The notes beneath the pieces are model-generated. The model was not told where the DNA came from and ran no database searches. It worked only from the letters and a program-made list of their open reading frames with translations. Of a stretch of DNA of 64,000 nt, positions 10,299-18,134 are shown piece by piece (position 1 is the stretch's first letter; the number at the start of each line of letters is the position of its first letter). Made by a program: the position numbers and the translations under genes. Location: the sequence record MN988561.1; one strand, 5' to 3'.

Positions 10299-10395
10299 TC
10301 GAGAGTGGTGGAACGGTAGACACATCCAGATAAAAGAGCAGTTTCTGGACGCTACTTAAATATGCGTGCTAGTTCAAGTCTAGCCTCTCGAACCA
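10299..10395 (+). tRNA. Leu-type tRNA with aberrant 15-nt anticodon loop (identity undetermined)
   Basis: TCGAGAG/CTCTCGA acceptor, A73-CCA, Leu-type D arm, long variable arm and normal T arm. The anticodon stem TCCAG/CTGGA closes ATAAAAGAGCAGTTT. Confidence 0.7.
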
Positions 10396-10429
10396 ATATT
10401 ATATGCTCATTCTTAGATAGGGATTACCA

Positions 10430-11191: not shown

Positions 11192-11349
11192 GAATTGAAT
11201 GTTGAGGCTACCAGCATAGCCTCCATTCTCCGACTCCCATAGGGACAAACTCAGCCTTAAACTTATTGTGAGTATCAAGAATTTATCTTCTGCTCAAGAT
11301 AAACAAACTAGCTTTGTATCCCTAAAACTTAGACAAGATTTACCAGATC

Positions 11350-11494
11350 CAGTCGCAGCATATCTCTATTTTCCCGGAAGGTCGTGAGTTCGAGTCTCAT
11401 CACCGCACCCAATTACCTACAATTGGACTGATGCGGTGTAGCTCAGTGGTAGAGCGTTCGTTTTATCTTGAAGATATTCTGTCGATGATGACTG
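11350..11494 (+). ncRNA. circularly permuted tRNA-like RNA
   Basis: T arm 11384-11400, then acceptor 3-prime strand CACCGCA-C-CCA, a 20-nt linker, acceptor 5-prime strand TGCGGTG and D arm; closed by CAGCATATCT/AGATATTCTG and CAGTC/GACTG. Confidence 0.8.
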
Positions 11495-11645
11495 TATGAA
11501 TCTATCGTAACGATTAAATATGCTCCGCGATAGGAGTGTATGTTACATTAACAAGAACAGGGTGGTTCCATGCGGAATGTGGTTCCACCCACCTCTTCTT
11601 ATATAAGATCATTCGGATTTTATATAATAAGAATTTGAGGTTTAC

Positions 11646-14505: not shown

Positions 14506-15150
14506 ATGTCAAAAGCAAGAGATTTACTTAATACCTTGAATGAAGCTGATGATTGGAATATTCACAAGAAAGAGTTGAAGAAGGCTGGATTTGATCTCCA
14601 TCCTAATCATCACGCTAATGTGAATATCAATCGTAACAACTATCCTCAGAATCGTGATATCTATACGGGTAAAATGAGTAATGGTCATACGATGGTTATT
14701 ACTCAATTAACTCCGATTGATATGGATCGATACGCATCTGTTAAGGATGCTTCTGGTAAATTTATCAAGCACTACTACGTAGCTCCTGTTAAACCTACAC
14801 TGAGTAAAAGTCCTGTATTAAAGTCTACAGCGATCGGTAATGATCCTAAGACAGTACTTGAAGAAATCAAAGCAGCTATGAGAATGGTTCCAGAAGGACG
14901 TCAGGCTACCTTTAGATCTGTTGAACAGAATGGTAAGTACTATGAGTTCGATGTCAGATACTGGGGAAGCTGGGAAGTTCCTGATGGTGAAGACGATGAT
15001 GGAGACTACGACTTTGAAGTCTTGACATCTAAATCGTCTAAGTCACTTCAGAACATTGTTGAGCCTATCATTAAGAAATATCCAAGTCTAGATATCTACT
15101 ATCAAACTGGAGAGAAGAATTATATTACTGTTCATGCTACTGTAAAGTAG
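14506..15150 (+). CDS. hypothetical protein with MSKA...LNE N-terminal peptide
   Basis: 214 aa ORF; shared N-terminal motif. Confidence 0.8.
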   Translation: MSKARDLLNTLNEADDWNIHKKELKKAGFDLHPNHHANVNINRNNYPQNRDIYTGKMSNGHTMVITQLTPIDMDRYASVKDASGKFIKHYYVAPVKPTLSKSPVLKSTAIGNDPKTVLEEIKAAMRMVPEGRQATFRSVEQNGKYYEFDVRYWGSWEVPDGEDDDGDYDFEVLTSKSSKSLQNIVEPIIKKYPSLDIYYQTGEKNYITVHATVK

Positions 15151-15160
15151 TTGACAGTAT

Positions 15161-15245
15161 GTCGGTATGGCGGAATTGGTAGACGCCCTGGTTTTAGGTA
15201 CCAGTGTCGAAAGACGTGTAGGTTCGAGTCCTATTACCGACACCA
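15161..15245 (+). tRNA. tRNA-Leu (UAG)
   Basis: Cloverleaf, ttTAGgt loop, long variable arm, CCA end. Confidence 0.95.
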
Positions 15246-15251
15246 AATTAT

Positions 15252-15386
15252 GACTTGATGTTGCGAAAGAAATGGTTACTTCGTATTCCAAACGAGAAAT
15301 GTAGGTATCGAATCCTGCTATCCTAATAGGATATCGTCTAAGATAGGACGCTAAAATTTCCATTTCTGACACTATCTCATCAAGTC
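15252..15386 (+). ncRNA. Y-RNA-like unit 1 (permuted tRNA module)
   Basis: GACTTGATG/CATCAAGTC stem, GTTGCGA...ATCTC, TTACTTCG; T arm precedes TATCC/GGATA acceptor and D arm. Confidence 0.8.
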
Positions 15387-15394
15387 TCATATTC

Positions 15395-15477
15395 AGATCT
15401 TGACGTTGCGACTAGTATCGGATACTTCGCTTTGGTTGCTAAAAACTCCGATGCAATATACTATCTCGTCAAGATCT
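15395..15477 (+). ncRNA. Y-RNA-like unit 2 (no tRNA module)
   Basis: AGATCTTGACG/CGTCAAGATCT stem, GTTGCGA...ATCTC, TACTTCG, short loop. Confidence 0.75.
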
Positions 15478-15487
15478 TTCAGTTTAT

Positions 15488-15632
15488 CCTAACGTTGCGA
15501 ATTAAACAGTTACTTCGATATCAAGCAGAAGGTCAATGGTTCGAATCCATTCATGCGACACGCGTTGCATGTAGCTCAGTTGGTTAGAGCGTCCGCCACC
15601 ACAAGATCTGTTTAAGTCATTATCTCGTTAGG
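15488..15632 (+). ncRNA. Y-RNA-like unit 3 (permuted tRNA module)
   Basis: CCTAACG/CGTTAGG stem; T arm AATGG-TTCGAAT-CCATT, looped acceptor CATGCGA/TTGCATG, D arm TAGCTCAGTTGGTTAGAGC. Confidence 0.85.
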
Positions 15633-15641
15633 TCCTTATAA

Positions 15642-15786
15642 CCTAGTGTTGCGATCGGTACAACTTCATCGCATTGTAAGCCCTGTGTCATTGGTTCAAA
15701 TCCAATTCCTCCGTCCATCTATCGGAGGATAGCTCAGTCTGGTAGAGCAAGGAAAGTATGTTGTATCAATATACCATCTCACTAGG
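15642..15786 (+). ncRNA. Y-RNA-like unit 4 (permuted tRNA module, internal CCA)
   Basis: CCTAGTG/CACTAGG stem; T arm, TCCTCCG-T-CCA, CGGAGGA, D arm. Confidence 0.85.
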
Positions 15787-15924
15787 ATCCTTATCTCATC
15801 CACCAACCTCGGTGTAAGAGTGGAAAGAGTTACGTGATCGTATGAGAATACGATCACAGTCATTTAGGTCATGTACCATGTGTACAAGGATCATTCGAAG
15901 GTGCTCGTCATCTTCAGCAAATAA

Positions 15925-16068
15925 TGTAGAGTTGCGAATATATCAAGTTCATCGCTTACCATATACCAAGCGGGTAGCTCAGTGGTTAGAGCACTAGGAT
16001 GTAACAGTCGTAGAGGTCGTCGGTTCGAATCCGACTCTAACTTCTTGATATAGACTTATCTCTCTACA
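15925..16068 (+). ncRNA. Y-RNA-like unit 5 (D arm before T arm)
   Basis: TGTAGAG/CTCTACA stem, GTTGCGA...ATCTC; the tRNA arms are in normal order and the acceptor pairs poorly. Confidence 0.8.
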
Positions 16069-16077
16069 ACTTTTATA

Positions 16078-16212
16078 TGTACTGTTGCGACTAATACGGT
16101 TACTTCGTTGCAAATGAAACATAGGTTCGAATCCTATCCAGAGGATTGTCGTAAGATGACATCTGGCTGAGCATTGGTGAGCTCATCTCCGTATTAACTA
16201 CATCTCAGTACA
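16078..16212 (+). ncRNA. Y-RNA-like unit 6 (permuted tRNA module)
   Basis: TGTACTG/CAGTACA stem; ATAGG-TTCGAAT-CCTAT, CCAGA/TCTGG, GAGC/GCTC D arm. Confidence 0.85.
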
Positions 16213-16222
16213 ATTACAATTC

Positions 16223-16379
16223 GTACCGTTGCGAATGATATGAATACATCGCTGTAGAACCGACGTCGTAAGACATGCTAGTTCAAGTCTAGCTCTCCGT
16301 CCCAATACTATGACGGAGATGGTGAAATTGGTAGACACATCGGTAGATAAATCTTCATATCGGCTTACAATCTCGGTAT
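16223..16379 (+). ncRNA. Y-RNA-like unit 7 (near-complete permuted Leu-type tRNA)
   Basis: GTACCG/CGGTAT stem; CTGTAGA-ACCGA, long variable arm, T arm, TCTCCGT-C-CCA, ACGGAGA, Leu-type D arm, TCGGT. Confidence 0.85.
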
Positions 16380-16388
16380 ATCTTAGAC

Positions 16389-16413
16389 GCTATGTTGCGA
16401 TAGTCCTCATAGC
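16389..16413 (+). promoter_or_regulatory. mini GTTGCGA hairpin in the Ro60 gene leader
   Basis: GCTATG-TTGCGA-TAGTCCT-CATAGC; ends 20 nt before the ATG. Confidence 0.5.
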
Positions 16414-16433
16414 ATTATCATAGGGAAAATGTC

Positions 16434-18002
16434 ATGGCTTCGATCAATAATAAGTCAGTTGCTAATCTTGCACGTACGGTTGCTCCTAAGGCAGTTGTAG
16501 CACCTCGTACATTCACTGGTTTATCTCATAACATTCGTAACAATAATGGTGCGATGGCGTATGATATCACTCCTATCGAGCAATTGAGACGTACTGTTCT
16601 CTCTTGCATGCTCTGGGAGGATTCTGCATATGAGTCTGGTGAACAGATTGCTAATCGTATTGAAAGATTGATCGGAGAGTGTGATCCCTCTGATGTAGCA
16701 CATCTTGCTCGTGAAGCAAGACATATCATGAAGCTACGTCATGTTCCTCTCTTTATGTGCATCACGATGCTGAAGTATCCCGAACATAAGAAATATGTTC
16801 GTAAGACACTCGCATCAGTTATTGAGCGTCCTGATGAGCTTGGTCAAGCTCTCGCTCTCTACTGGAAGGATGCTCTTTCTCCTGCTCGTACTACTGAAGA
16901 TACTGAAATCGGACCTCGAGTTACTTACGTTTCTCAGAGAAAGTCTGATCTGAATCTTCCTCTCCAACTACGTAGAGGTCTTGAAGATGCTCTACAGAAG
17001 TTTGACTCTTATCAGTTGAAGAAGTACCTTATGAAGGACAAGCCTGTCTCTATGGCTGACATTCTTCGTATCGTCCACCCTAAGGGTAAGACTGATGAGA
17101 TCAAAGCTACCTATGGCGAAATCGTCAAGGGTACTGCTACTGCACCTGATACATGGGAGTCTCGTCTCTCATCTTCTGGTAGATCTGAGAAAGCTACAAT
17201 CTTCACAGATATGCTCGAACGTAACAAATTAGGTGCAATGGCTCTACTGAAGAATCTGCGTGGTATGACTGAGGCTGGTGTTGATACCAATCTTATTAAT
17301 ACTGCGATTCAGAAGATGAATACTGAACGTGTTCTTCCTTTCAGATTCCTCACAGCTGCTCGTCATGCTCCTCAGTTCAAGTCTAGTCTCGGTGAGGCTA
17401 TGCTAAAATCTCTGAAGGACATTCAGAATCTGCCTGGTCATACAGTACTACTGATTGACATCTCAGGTAGTATGGGTGGACGTATTTCAGGTAAGTCTGA
17501 TCTGAGACGTATTGATGCTGCAGCTGCTATTGCTATCATGTTGAAGGAAATTTGTCAGTCTTCTGATATGTTTGTCTTCAATTATGGTACGTATCAAGTA
17601 CGTAACGATAACGTCTTCTGCGTGAATCAACCTACTGCTAACAATCACGGATACTCCAGGATTGTTGAGAGTACGAGGATCTACAATTACGAAGAAGATG
17701 CTGTAGTGAAGAGAGGATTTGATCTATCAGATCTTATCGTCAATTCAGTAGTTGGTGGAACTGATCTCCAGCAAGCTGTCAGTTACATCAATAATACTGT
17801 AGAGTATGATCGTATGATTATCTTTACAGATGACGAATCATCTACTGTTCCGCCAGCTCCTAGAGGTCTTTCCTATTCGATCAATGTATCGACTGGAAAC
17901 TATGGAGTGACGTACGGTGATTATGTCCACATCAACGGATTCTCTGAAGGTGTGATCGGCTATGTCACTGAGTACGACAAGTACGTGAAGAGTCAGAATT
18001 AA
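16434..18002 (+). CDS. rsr: Ro60/TROVE domain RNA-binding protein (TROVE + vWA)
   Basis: LRHVPL, IERPDEL, PDTWESRLSS, LGAMALLKNLRGM, RVLPFRFLTAA and LIDISGSM motifs typical of Ro60 orthologues. Confidence 0.93.
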   Translation: MASINNKSVANLARTVAPKAVVAPRTFTGLSHNIRNNNGAMAYDITPIEQLRRTVLSCMLWEDSAYESGEQIANRIERLIGECDPSDVAHLAREARHIMKLRHVPLFMCITMLKYPEHKKYVRKTLASVIERPDELGQALALYWKDALSPARTTEDTEIGPRVTYVSQRKSDLNLPLQLRRGLEDALQKFDSYQLKKYLMKDKPVSMADILRIVHPKGKTDEIKATYGEIVKGTATAPDTWESRLSSSGRSEKATIFTDMLERNKLGAMALLKNLRGMTEAGVDTNLINTAIQKMNTERVLPFRFLTAARHAPQFKSSLGEAMLKSLKDIQNLPGHTVLLIDISGSMGGRISGKSDLRRIDAAAAIAIMLKEICQSSDMFVFNYGTYQVRNDNVFCVNQPTANNHGYSRIVESTRIYNYEEDAVVKRGFDLSDLIVNSVVGGTDLQQAVSYINNTVEYDRMIIFTDDESSTVPPAPRGLSYSINVSTGNYGVTYGDYVHINGFSEGVIGYVTEYDKYVKSQN

Positions 18003-18050
18003 GTAGTGAGAATTGGGAGTGAAATACCTCCCAATTCCATTTATCTAAAT

Positions 18051-18134
18051 GCCCACTTGATGGAATTGGTAGACATAAGGCACTTAAAATGCCTAGCTTA
18101 ATGCGTACCGGTTCGAGTCCGGTAGTGGGTACCA
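18051..18134 (+). tRNA. tRNA-Leu (UAA)
   Basis: Cloverleaf, ctTAAaa loop, CCA end. Confidence 0.95.

What the first reader, a model, noticed from the sequence alone, without database searches (positions are those of the whole stretch)
16223..16379. Unit 7 is an almost complete circularly permuted tRNA split at the anticodon loop
SEEN: joining the 5-prime half (ACGGAGA TG GTG..GGTAGACAC A TCGGT) to the upstream 3-prime half (CTGTAGA ACCGA..T arm TCTCCGT C CCA) gives a full type II cloverleaf. It has a 5-bp anticodon stem, a 7-nt loop CU-GUA-GA and CCA. Other units keep similar loop remnants (TTCCAAA, TTGTAAG, TTGCAAA). ESTABLISHED: permuted tRNA genes matured through circular intermediates are known from Cyanidioschyzon and some archaea, not as a standard phage feature. 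INFERENCE: either an evolutionary snapshot of a tRNA becoming a Y RNA, or a precursor that could be cut and religated. A Leu-type body with a Tyr anticodon would miscode if matured.
Basis: partly seen in the sequence, partly recalled or inferred. Interest (0 to 1): 0.7.

Follow-up and report, generated by a model that had tools for sequence, protein, structure and literature searches.

The report
Phage Y RNA with tRNA-shaped core
This is the last of seven small RNA genes lined up in front of a Rhizobium phage's Ro60 gene; like the known bacterial YrlA "Y RNAs", it carries a tRNA look-alike with its ends swapped, so it is most likely a partner RNA for Ro and not a permuted tRNA gene waiting to be cut and re-joined.

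Summary
Joining 16313-16344 to 16252-16304 gives an 85-nt class II cloverleaf ending in CCA that ARAGORN calls a tRNA; none of 1000 shuffles is called. The "Tyr anticodon" is an artefact of where the join is placed. Taking 3, 5, 7 or 9 nt as the loop gives Ser, Leu, Tyr or Thr, and the same 7-nt join in sister phage Y65 gives His.

The window matches Rhizobium phage RHph_TM61/TM40. Unit 7 is the last full unit of an unannotated array of seven, each framed by GTTGCGA and ATCTC, ending 51 nt before a TROVE/Ro60 gene. The order is anticodon-stem 3' strand, variable arm, T arm, loop-closed acceptor stem, D arm, anticodon-stem 5' strand. This is the published layout of YrlA Y RNAs.

Units of the same type sit before Ro in Brevundimonas and Caulobacter phages whose Ro proteins are 37-39% identical. 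Of 24 core pairs, 14 show compensatory changes. It is therefore an old, conserved design and not a transitional form.

I found no bulge-helix-bulge motif, no fixed loop length and no RNA ligase. By analogy with Mycobacterium smegmatis YrlA and two-piece tmRNA, RNase P may nick the acceptor loop and leave a CCA end. No re-ligation is needed. Verdict: new member of a known kind.

The parts
15246..16433 (+). Unannotated array between tRNA-Leu(tag) and the Ro gene. It holds seven Y-RNA-like units (U1 15250-15390, U2 15395-15481, U3 15486-15637, U4 15640-15792, U5 15923-16074, U6 16077-16217, U7 16221-16383) and a mini hairpin, U8.
   Evidence: Eight of the 16 GTTGCGA matches in the window fall here, all on the + strand; 3.8 are expected by chance for the whole window. 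Each has a downstream ATCTC and complementary flanks. Rfam YrlA gives sub-threshold hits to U3 (36.2 bits) and U4 (37.3 bits). The stretch has no features in GenBank.
16223..16227 (+). U7 outer stem, 5' strand (GTACC). It pairs with 16375-16379 (GGTAT).
16228..16234 (+). GTTGCGA, the presumed Ro-binding motif. It contains the CGAA core and aligns with GGCGCA/GGCGTA of the Caulobacter and Brevundimonas phage units.
   Evidence: also conserved as GTTGCGAA in a metagenomic phage contig whose Ro is 47% identical; motif described in PMC4201824 and PMC12135203
16237..16244 (+). Middle helix, 5' strand (GATATGAA). It pairs with TTCATATC at 16354-16361.
16245..16258 (+). 5' side of the internal loop.
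   Evidence: This stretch varies in length in homologues (5-7 nt after ACNTCG), and 16256 is A in the window but G in Y65.
16259..16263 (+). Anticodon-like stem, 3' strand (ACCGA). It pairs with TCGGT at 16340-16344.
   Evidence: helix 1: 90% of cells paired; one pair changes A-U to G-C
16264..16276 (+). Long (class II) variable arm.
   Evidence: It is re-paired with different letters in Y65.
16277..16293 (+). T arm (GCTAG TTCAAGT CTAGC).
   Evidence: 100% paired; 4 of 5 pairs changed on both sides. It is identical to the T arm of the tRNA-like gene at 10299-10396.
16294..16304 (+). Acceptor 3' strand TCTCCGT, then C73, then genome-encoded CCA.
   Evidence: Unchanged in Y65 although the unit as a whole is only 86% identical.
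16305..16312 (+). 8-nt spacer closing the acceptor stem. Its last G (16312) pairs with C73 to make an 8th acceptor pair. The predicted RNase P site lies at its 3' end.
   Evidence: pair 85-97 is kept in all 6 sequences. The cleavage itself is inferred from M. smegmatis YrlA (PMC4201824).
16313..16339 (+). Acceptor 5' strand ACGGAGA, TG, Leu-type D arm with a 3-bp stem, and A26.
   Evidence: The D stem changes from GTG/CAC to GGG/CCC in Y65.
16345..16353 (+). 3' side of the internal loop (AGATAAATC).
16370..16374 (+). ATCTC, the 3'-strand partner motif opposite GTTGCGA.
   Evidence: present in all seven units
16389..16420 (+). U8, a mini hairpin carrying GTTGCGA in the Ro 5' leader.
16434..18002 (+). 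Ro60/Rsr orthologue (TROVE plus vWA, 522 aa).
   Evidence: Pfam TROVE 2.8e-13; annotated as a TROVE protein; 2551 homologues found, many named 60 kDa SS-A/Ro

Best explanation
Unit 7 is a YrlA-type Y RNA: a small non-coding RNA made to be bound by the phage's own Ro60 protein, whose gene starts 51 nt downstream.

Its two ends pair into a long stem that carries the Ro-binding motif (GTTGCGA opposite ATCTC). The far end of that stem runs, through an internal loop, into what would be the anticodon stem of a tRNA. The rest is a complete class II tRNA body: variable arm, T arm, D arm, and an 8-bp acceptor stem closed by a short loop that begins with CCA. The "circular permutation" is simply how a tRNA-shaped module is mounted on a Y-RNA stem.

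Shown here: the sequence architecture, its position next to Ro, its conservation with covariation in distant phages, and the lack of a splicing-type junction.

Inferred:
- Ro binds the stem.
- The tRNA-like module recruits or mimics tRNA-binding partners. In other systems these are PNPase and tRNA modification and processing enzymes.
- About an even chance: host RNase P cuts at the 5' side of the acceptor 5' strand, and 3' exonucleases trim the spacer back to the encoded CCA. This would leave a nicked, two-piece RNA held together by base pairing, as in M. smegmatis YrlA and in the two-piece tmRNA of alphaproteobacteria. No ligation step is involved.
For: Position:
- The unit sits directly upstream of a TROVE/vWA Ro gene on the same strand.
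- It is the seventh of seven units sharing GTTGCGA...ATCTC. Eight of 16 window matches lie within 1.14 kb, against 3.8 expected for the whole window.

Family resemblance:
- Sister units U3 and U4, and a further element at 11355-11494, are the best Rfam YrlA matches in the window (36-37 bits, E about 1e-6).
- U7's order of arms equals the YrlA consensus structure printed.
- PMC4201824 describes YrlA as T arm, closed acceptor stem-loop and D arm, with a V arm upstream, mounted on a Ro-binding stem and encoded within 4 kb of Ro on the same strand, in more than 250 bacteria and 22 phages.

Conservation:
- GTTGCGAA is also present in units upstream of a Ro that is 47% identical.
- U7-type units with a class II body stand before Ro in Bambus, Papperlapapp, CcrColossus and CcrPW. 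On alignment A3, 95.8% of cells are paired, 14 of 24 pairs changed on both sides, 0 of 500 shuffles reach this, and slid controls give 30-42%.
- Between the window and Y65, U7 differs at 23 of 164 columns while the Ro gene is 98.6% identical. The D stem and variable arm are re-paired, and the acceptor stem, C73-CCA and anticodon-like stem are untouched.

Support for the nick:
- M. smegmatis YrlA, with a 7-bp acceptor stem, is cut by RNase P in vitro and is found in vivo as two Rsr-bound halves, one ending in CCA (PMC4201824).
- NCCA directly follows the acceptor 3' strand in U4, U5, U7 and the 11355-11494 element, and in units of CcrColossus/CcrPW, Bambus, L130 and L218.
- All 20 phage tRNA genes encode CCA.
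Against: - There is no experimental or transcript evidence. No sequencing run was listed for the array or for the Ro gene.
- U7 gets no Rfam YrlA hit even at E up to 10. The sister units reach only about half of the 69-bit gathering score.
- The 5' motif is UGCGAA and not the published GNCGAA. Ro binding is untested.
- No convincing promoter or terminator frames the unit, so its ends are unknown.
- Against the nick: the Papperlapapp/Domovoi/Kabachok orthologue has no CCA in the acceptor loop. The conserved 8th pair (N-1:N73) could hinder or shift RNase P cleavage. PMC4201824 reports that Salmonella YrlA and Deinococcus Yrn1 were not seen to be cut.
Confidence: 0.8

Rival explanations
1. A true circularly permuted tRNA gene. 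The transcript's ends would be cut and ligated in the anticodon loop, giving a circular intermediate, and the acceptor spacer would then be removed to yield a decoding tRNA.
For: The gene order (3' half, spacer, 5' half) and the complete cloverleaf after joining match the layout of permuted tRNA genes. Class II tRNAs are over-represented among those genes (PMC3978253).
Against: - Known cases are in algae and archaea and depend on a bulge-helix-bulge motif cut by the tRNA-splicing endonuclease (PMC3978253). That these bacterial hosts lack this endonuclease is general knowledge, not checked here. Here the leader and trailer form a 14 x 9 nt internal loop followed by an 8-bp helix and the Ro motif, which is not a bulge-helix-bulge.
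- The would-be loop differs in length among homologues (5-7 nt) and in 'anticodon' (GTA versus GTG).
- The amino-acid reading depends only on the chosen join.
- No RtcB, Rnl or Pnkp was found.
- C73 fits none of the Leu, Tyr or Ser identity rules (my own knowledge of identity elements, not tested here).
- The phage already has tRNA-Tyr(gta) and two tRNA-Leu genes.
Confidence: 0.03
2. A decaying relic with no function of its own: a tandem duplicate of a phage class II tRNA gene that lost its outer halves and happens to lie in the Y-RNA array.
For: - U7 resembles the phage's own tRNA-Leu(tag) (61 of 85 positions).
- Its D and T arms resemble those of the tRNA-like gene at 10299-10396.
- tRNA genes of this phage group are mosaic: tRNA-Leu(taa) is 81% identical between the window and Y65.
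Against: - Compensatory changes keep every helix, both between the window and Y65 and across three phage genera.
- The acceptor stem and CCA are invariant in a unit that is only 86% identical overall.
- The unit has its own Ro motif pair and closing stem, like the other six units.
Confidence: 0.04
3. The functional form is the processed two-piece RNA, and its CCA end is aminoacylated. Ro would then carry a charged tRNA mimic that acts on EF-Tu, ribosomes or aminoacyl-tRNA-using enzymes, in the way the tRNA-like domain of two-piece tmRNA does.
For: - The module has encoded NCCA, an 8-bp acceptor stem and a complete class II body.
- There is a precedent for RNase P cleavage and a CCA end in M. 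smegmatis YrlA, whose authors raise possible aminoacylation (PMC4201824).
- Alphaproteobacteria, the class to which the host genus belongs, carry permuted tmRNA genes whose transcripts mature into two-piece tmRNA (PMC11915505).
Against: - CCA is absent from the orthologue in one Brevundimonas phage lineage.
- C73 with a paired N-1 matches no class II identity set, and there is no G3-U70 (sequence).
- No charging data exist for any Y RNA (PMC4201824).
Confidence: 0.1
4. A tRNA decoy. The tRNA-like modules of the array, U7 included, would soak up or report host tRNA-targeting defence nucleases or tRNA-modifying enzymes, with Ro serving mainly as a stabilising scaffold.
For: - The array lies inside a cluster of 20 phage tRNA genes.
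- The modules mimic different tRNA types.
- They evolve much faster than the neighbouring genes while keeping their pairing: U3 is 89.5% and U7 86.0% identical, against 98.6% for the Ro gene. This is the pattern expected in an arms race.
- The Salmonella rsr-yrlBA-rtcBA operon responds to damaged tRNAs, according to the abstract of PMC7790460.
Against: This is purely inferential. The fast change could equally be recombination among tRNA genes, since tRNA-Leu(taa) also shows it. No defence nuclease is linked to this host.
Confidence: 0.1

Closest known systems
YrlA (Y RNA-like A; Rfam RF02553) of Salmonella, M. smegmatis and phages
   Same: - It is encoded just upstream of Ro on the same strand.
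- The 5' and 3' ends pair into a stem with a CGAA-containing Ro motif.
- The tRNA-like module has the order (V arm) - T arm - closed acceptor stem-loop - D arm, with a short stem in the anticodon-stem position leading back to the Y stem.
- The M. smegmatis member has a 7-bp acceptor stem, is cut by RNase P and ends in CCA (PMC4201824).
   Different: - U7 has a full 5-bp anticodon-like stem plus A26, a 13-nt class II variable arm, an 8-bp acceptor stem and a genome-encoded CCA. In M. smegmatis, CA is added after transcription.
- Its motif is GUUGCGA and not GNCGAA.
- It is not detected by the Rfam model.
Two-piece (circularly permuted) tmRNA of Alphaproteobacteria
   Same: The gene order is T arm - acceptor 3' strand - NCCA - intervening segment - acceptor 5' strand. 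The transcript is cut by tRNA-processing enzymes into two base-paired pieces (PMC11915505). The host genus, Rhizobium, belongs to the Alphaproteobacteria, one of the main clades with such genes.
   Different: - There is no tag reading frame and there are no pseudoknots.
- There is no G3-U70.
- U7 has a real D arm.
- There is no Rfam tmRNA hit in the array.
- U7 is associated with Ro and not with SmpB.
Circularly permuted tRNA genes of Cyanidioschyzon merolae, green algae and Thermofilum pendens
   Same: The 3' half lies upstream of the 5' half, with a spacer between the acceptor ends. The junction would fall in the anticodon loop (their type II). Class II tRNAs are favoured. CCA is encoded in the T. 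pendens cases (PMC3978253).
   Different: Those genes need a bulge-helix-bulge motif, the splicing endonuclease, a ligase and a circular intermediate, and they yield a decoding tRNA. None of these features is present or plausible here.
Yrl1/Yrl2 of Thermus phage phiLo, and metazoan Y RNAs
   Same: These are phage-encoded Y-like RNAs upstream of a phage Ro60. They have a terminal stem and a CGAA motif and form Ro-Y RNA-PNPase complexes in vitro (PMC12135203).
   Different: The text I read for the phiLo RNAs describes a stem-bulge-stem shape and mentions no tRNA-like module, and PMC4201824 says such a domain is not apparent in the metazoan Y RNAs identified so far.

Membership tests
YrlA-type Y RNA | Encoded within about 4 kb of a Ro60 orthologue on the same strand | tested here: met
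   U7 ends at 16383 and the Ro ATG is at 16434, both on the + strand.
YrlA-type Y RNA | 5' motif GNCGAAN0-1G in a stem formed by the RNA's two ends | tested here: inconclusive
   U7 has GUUGCGAAUG. CGAA-N-G is present, but the first G is U. The closing stem is present. The motif recurs in all 8 units and in L130.
YrlA-type Y RNA | T-arm-like and D-arm-like stem-loops with tRNA-invariant bases, separated by an acceptor-like stem-loop, with an optional V stem-loop upstream of T | tested here: met
   covariation
YrlA-type Y RNA | Scores at or above the Rfam RF02553 gathering score (69 bits) | tested here: not met
   U7 has no hit at E up to 10. U3 scores 36.2, U4 37.3 and the element at 11355-11494 scores 37.4 bits. 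The U7-type units of CcrColossus and Bambus also have no hit at E up to 0.01. This is an operational cut-off and not a biological criterion. For this reason I call U7 YrlA-type by architecture and not a curated RF02553 member.
YrlA-type Y RNA | Bound by the Ro60 orthologue in vivo | not testable with these tools
   Needs immunoprecipitation or a gel-shift assay.
Circularly permuted tRNA gene | 3' half upstream of 5' half, joined at the acceptor ends by an intervening sequence | tested here: met
Circularly permuted tRNA gene | Leader and trailer form a bulge-helix-bulge motif at the junction | tested here: not met
   The junction is a 14 x 9 nt internal loop, followed by an 8-bp helix and the Ro motif. 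It does not have two 3-nt bulges around a 4-bp helix.
Circularly permuted tRNA gene | Joining restores a conserved 7-nt anticodon loop with a fixed anticodon | tested here: not met
   The spacing is 5, 6, 7 or 7 nt in homologues. The window has GTA and Y65 has GTG. The call depends on the join chosen.
Circularly permuted tRNA gene | Splicing endonuclease and RNA ligase available; circular RNA intermediate | tested here: inconclusive
   No RtcB, Rnl or Pnkp is named among the 383 features of MN988522. Ten large unnamed ORFs have no such Pfam domain. Host enzymes and RNA intermediates could not be examined.
Two-piece tmRNA | Permuted tRNA-like domain with an NCCA - intervening segment - 5' acceptor strand | tested here: met
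Two-piece tmRNA | G3-U70 alanine identity pair, tag reading frame, pseudoknots; match to the Rfam tmRNA models | tested here: not met
   Acceptor pair 3-70 is G-C. There is no tmRNA hit in the array at E up to 10, and ARAGORN finds no tmRNA.

The most novel reading that the evidence does not exclude
U7-type units would form a distinct, conserved subclass of phage Y RNAs. Host RNase P and 3' trimming would mature them into a two-piece, CCA-ended class II tRNA mimic that stays tethered to the phage Ro. That free CCA end would be used: either charged, or recognised by tRNA-directed host enzymes or defence nucleases. Together with the other six differently shaped modules, the array would then be a phage toolkit for tRNA surveillance or decoying, evolving quickly under host pressure.
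Probability: 0.12. Interest if true: 0.75.

Novelty: new member of a known kind. Interest (0 to 1): 0.35.

Why it matters
The result removes a tempting but wrong reading, a bacterial-virus permuted tRNA that would miscode, and replaces it with a testable one.

It also shows several things about annotation and about this phage group:
- These 200-kb Rhizobium phages carry an unannotated array of seven or eight Ro-partner RNAs next to their 20 tRNA genes.
- GenBank lists parts of such units in other phages as short "tRNA" genes.
- One unit type, with a class II body, an 8-bp acceptor stem and usually an encoded CCA, is shared with Caulobacter and Brevundimonas phages.

What the tRNA-like domain of bacterial Y RNAs does is still unknown. 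Phage arrays with many different modules, and with fast compensatory evolution, offer natural variants to test this. They also offer a host group that carries permuted tmRNA genes, whose tRNA-like domain is matured into two pieces.

Tried and rejected
1. Transcript evidence.
2. Closer relatives of the Ro locus. Single-protein scans of IMG/VR and of JGI metagenomes found none. The protein search gave homologues at 50% identity or less. The best one had no retrievable DNA. The second, L130, was useful.
3. DNA-pattern scans of IMG/VR.
   - GTTGCGA...TACTTCG returned only chance matches; none was followed by a T loop or lay in a run of Y-RNA-like units.
   - TACTTCG...TGGARCCGG returned CcrColossus and CcrPW again, plus two new Y-like units, L218 and L253.
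4. Promoter and terminator scan. Nothing above the shuffled expectation was found inside the array. The only terminator follows Ro, at 18010-18037.
5. Folding energy. The z-scores are weak (-1.25 for U7), as is usual for tRNAs. I relied on covariation instead.
6. A histidine reading. U7 has a G-1:C73 pair, and Y65 has GTG in the 'anticodon' position. I rejected this reading because the anticodon depends on the join, and because, as far as I know, alphaproteobacterial tRNA-His does not use G-1:C73.
7. Two Wolin-lab reviews and the Keiler 2000 paper are not held in the library. The supplement of PMC4201824 that lists phage YrlAs is not held either. I therefore could not check whether the CcrColossus U7-type unit was already listed.
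8. I did not build a covariance model of the U7 type, because the loci in hand were already aligned by eye and tested.
Full report
WHAT THE WINDOW IS

The stretch 15100-18100 is 100% identical to several Rhizobium phages of the genus Cuauhnahuacvirus (Kleczkowskaviridae, about 207 kb), including RHph_TM40 and RHph_TM61. A second stretch is 100% identical to TM61 and TM39. The finding lies in 1.19 kb that GenBank leaves without features. This stretch runs from tRNA-Leu(tag) at 15161-15245 to a gene annotated as a TROVE-domain protein at 16434-18002. Pfam confirms TROVE (2.8e-13) with a weak vWA domain, so this is a Ro60/Rsr orthologue. The region closes a cluster of 20 phage tRNA genes, all on the + strand and all encoding CCA.

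CHECKING THE OBSERVATION

- The joined sequence 16313-16344 plus 16252-16304 is 85 nt. ARAGORN draws it as a class II cloverleaf with a 7-bp acceptor stem, a 3-bp D stem, a 5-bp anticodon stem, a 13-nt variable arm, a 5-bp T stem and C-CCA.
- None of 1000 shuffles of those 85 nt is called a tRNA. The unjoined genomic unit is not called either.
- RNAfold on the unjoined 163 nt finds the same arms on its own.

The anticodon is not real. Taking 3, 5, 7, 9 or 10 nt gives ARAGORN calls of Ser, Leu, Tyr, Thr or Ala. Taking 4, 6 or 8 nt gives tRNA calls with no readable anticodon, and 11 nt gives no call. In the genome these bases are the 5' side of a 14 x 9 nt internal loop.

THE ARRAY

GTTGCGA occurs 16 times in the window on both strands, against 3.8 expected. 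Eight of these lie at 15260-16400, all on the + strand. Each of the first seven is followed 70-140 nt later by ATCTC, and the bases outside the two motifs are complementary. This defines seven hairpin-closed units, U1 to U7. An eighth mini hairpin with the same motif sits in the Ro leader at 16389-16420.

Rfam's YrlA model (RF02553) matches U3 (36.2 bits, full length) and U4 (37.3 bits) with E about 1e-6 in this search. Both are below its 69-bit gathering score, and U7 is not matched at all.

The units are not copies of each other.

- U2 has no tRNA-like part.
- U1, U3 and U6 have an intact local anticodon-type hairpin. In these units the Y stem enters between the D arm and that hairpin.
- In U5 the order is closed acceptor hairpin, D arm, anticodon-like arm, T arm.
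- Only U4 and U7 have the Y stem continuing from the anticodon-like stem.

WHAT IS KNOWN ABOUT THIS LAYOUT

Chen et al. 2014 (PMC4201824) defined YrlA RNAs. These are encoded within 4 kb of Ro on the same strand in 254 bacteria and 22 phages. They have a 5' GNCGAA-type motif thought to bind Ro and a central tRNA-like domain.

That domain consists of a T arm, an acceptor-like stem closed by a loop, and a D arm, often with a V stem-loop upstream of the T arm. The consensus structure printed shows the same order, enclosed by a 4-bp stem in the anticodon-stem position that leads back to the terminal stem. The permutation is thus the family's normal design.

The same paper shows that M. smegmatis YrlA, which has a 7-bp acceptor stem, is cleaved by RNase P RNA in vitro. 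In vivo it is found as two Rsr-bound halves, and the 5' half ends in CCA. [quoted passage not shown] It also shows that a Thermus phage Ro binds two phage-encoded Y-like RNAs and forms complexes with host PNPase.

IS U7 A TRANSITIONAL FORM OR A MAINTAINED DESIGN?

Ro homologues are found by tblastn in 86 phage records; outside this phage group the best matches are 37-39% identical. I read the DNA upstream of several of them.

- CcrColossus has about eight units over 1.2 kb.
- Xanthomonas phage 10KY502B has about five.
- Brevundimonas phage Bambus has about five.
- Rfam gives sub-threshold YrlA hits to some of these units.
- Short "tRNA" features in GenBank overlap parts of such units: tRNA-Gln in CcrColossus, tRNA-Thr in 10KY502B and tRNA-Ser in Gurke.

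In the Bambus, Marchewka and Papperlapapp/Domovoi/Kabachok phages the last unit before Ro, and in CcrColossus and CcrPW the second-to-last, has U7's build. It has ACNTCG, a few bases, a 4-5 bp anticodon-like strand, a long variable arm, a T arm, a 7-bp acceptor strand, N73, a short loop, the acceptor 5' strand, TG, a 3-bp class II D arm, A26 and the returning strand.

I aligned six such sequences (A3) and counted the 24 core pairs.

- 95.8% of cells form standard pairs.
- 14 pairs show changes on both sides.
- 0 of 500 column shuffles reach these values.
- Sliding the partners by 1-3 columns drops pairing to 30-42%.
- The eighth acceptor pair, N-1 with N73, is kept in all six sequences.

A design kept with this much compensation across three phage genera is not a snapshot of a tRNA turning into something else.

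THE NEAREST COMPARISON: PHAGE Y65

The Ro genes of the window and Y65 are 98.6% identical in nucleotides. U1, U2, U4 and U6 are 98-100% identical, but U7 is 86.0% and U3 is 89.5%. The changes in U7 fall as follows.

- The D stem goes from GTG/CAC to GGG/CCC.
- The variable arm is re-paired with new letters.
- The T loop and D loop change but keep GG and TTC.
- One T-stem pair becomes G-U.
- The acceptor stem, C73-CCA and the anticodon-like stem are unchanged.
- The middle base of the supposed anticodon's neighbourhood changes, so the same 7-nt join reads GTG (His) in Y65.

This argues for selection on the fold and on the acceptor end, and against selection on an anticodon. The fast change is not peculiar to U7. 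tRNA-Leu(taa), just after Ro, is only 81% identical. I cannot tell diversifying selection from module exchange by recombination.

COULD IT BE CUT AND RE-JOINED?

Permuted tRNA genes are known from algae and one archaeon. Their leader and trailer form a bulge-helix-bulge motif that the tRNA-splicing endonuclease cuts. The ends are then ligated into a circle, and RNase P and tRNase Z open the acceptor loop (PMC3978253).

None of this fits U7.

- The junction is a large asymmetric internal loop followed by an 8-bp helix and the Ro motif.
- The bases between ACNTCG and the anticodon-like strand number 5 in CcrColossus, 6 in Papperlapapp, and 7 in Bambus and U7.
- In U7-type units, UUC of ACUUCG (AUC in U7) can pair with GAA (GAU in U7) on the other side of the loop. 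This would make the "loop remnant" a bulge. I read this from the sequences; it could not be counted on A3 because the columns are out of register.
- None of the 383 annotated features of MN988522 is named RNA ligase, RtcB or polynucleotide kinase.
- Ten unnamed ORFs of 292-749 aa gave no Pfam hit of that kind. About two thirds of the genes are unnamed, so absence is not proven, and host enzymes were not examined.

MOST LIKELY MECHANISM

Shown by this analysis:
- U7 is a conserved structured RNA gene of YrlA architecture beside Ro.

Inferred from the family:
- Ro binds the GTTGCGA/ATCTC stem.
- The tRNA-like module is presented to tRNA-binding partners.

Inferred with roughly even odds:
- RNase P cuts at the 3' end of the 8-nt spacer, at 16312/16313 or one base upstream because of the N-1:C73 pair.
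- 3' exonucleases then trim back to the encoded CCA at 16304.
- This gives two base-paired pieces, as in M. smegmatis YrlA and as in the two-piece tmRNA made from the permuted tmRNA genes found in Alphaproteobacteria, the class to which the host genus belongs (PMC11915505).

In favour of the nick: NCCA follows the acceptor 3' strand directly in U4, U5 and U7, in the extra element at 11355-11494, in two CcrColossus/CcrPW units, in Bambus, in L130 and in L218. U4 and an L130 unit even share the loop CCATCTAT.

Against it: the Papperlapapp lineage lacks CCA, and Salmonella YrlA is reported uncut (PMC4201824).

Charging seems unlikely to me. C73 with a paired N-1 fits none of the Leu, Tyr or Ser identity rules, and there is no G3-U70. 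This rests on my own knowledge of identity elements and is untested.

LIMITS

- No public sequencing run was listed, so there is no evidence on transcription, RNA ends, nicking or Ro binding.
- U7 fails the Rfam threshold.
- The supplement that lists which phage YrlAs were already reported is not held. I therefore cannot say whether the CcrColossus counterpart of U7 has been listed before.

VERDICT

U7 is a new member of the known YrlA kind. It belongs to a class II, usually CCA-encoding subtype shared with Caulobacter and Brevundimonas phages. Interest is moderate to low for the finding as stated. The array as a whole and its fast compensatory evolution are the more interesting leads.

Noticed in passing
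window 11355-11494 (context 11192-11645): A further YrlA-like RNA lies outside the Ro array, in an unannotated gap of the tRNA cluster. It scores 37.4 bits, full length, against Rfam YrlA. It has a T arm, a 7-bp acceptor stem, C73-CCA, a 20-nt spacer and a D arm, but no GTTGCGA. Against Y65 the region is 86.7% identical, with three compensatory acceptor pairs, one compensatory T-stem pair and a re-paired outer helix.
   Followed up: partly
window 10299-10396: An unannotated class II tRNA-like gene. It has a 7-bp acceptor stem, A73-CCA, a D arm close to U7's and a T arm identical to U7's. Its 'anticodon' arm has a 6-bp stem and a 13-nt loop. Neither ARAGORN nor Rfam calls it. It is almost unchanged in Y65.
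   Followed up: partly
window 16389-16420: A mini hairpin, gctat-GTTGCGA-tagtc-CTC-atagc, lies in the Ro 5' leader and ends 14 nt before the ATG. It may be a site where Ro regulates its own mRNA. It is identical in Y65.
   Followed up: no
window 15246-16433: The array holds three different ways of mounting a tRNA-like module on the Y stem. In U4 and U7 the mount is through the anticodon stem. In U1, U3 and U6 it is between the D arm and an intact anticodon-type hairpin. In U5 it is between the T arm and the acceptor stem. U2 has no module. The U5 type recurs in metagenomic contig L130.
   Followed up: partly
window 15486-15637, 16221-16383, 18051-18134: tRNA and tRNA-like genes diverge far more between the window and Y65 than their neighbours do. 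U3 is 89.5%, U7 86.0% and tRNA-Leu(taa) 81% identical, against 98.6% for the Ro gene and 100% for tRNA-Leu(tag). The cause, recombination or selection, is unknown.
   Followed up: partly
L005 2143-2210, L006 2316-2383, L131 1381-1455: GenBank 'tRNA-Gln' (CcrColossus), 'tRNA-Thr' (Xanthomonas phage 10KY502B) and 'tRNA-Ser' (Brevundimonas phage Gurke), all just upstream of Ro genes, overlap Y-RNA-like units and are probably mis-annotations.
   Followed up: partly
L005 1700-2930; L006 1860-2440; L007 2130-2960: Other Ro-encoding phages carry arrays of about 5-8 Y-like units with a different motif pair, GGTGGCGTAG ... GTTCCCC. All share a (U)ACUUCG motif with the Rhizobium phage units.
   Followed up: partly
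L007 6789-7046: Brevundimonas phage Bambus carries a permuted (two-piece type) tmRNA gene about 2.4 kb downstream of its Ro gene. It scores 57.9 bits against Rfam tmRNA_permuted, above the gathering score.
   Followed up: no
window 15793-15922: A 130-nt spacer between U4 and U5 has no Ro motif. It contains a perfect 10-bp hairpin (GTGATCGTAT...ATACGATCAC) and other stems. It is 93% identical in Y65. Its function is unknown.
   Followed up: no
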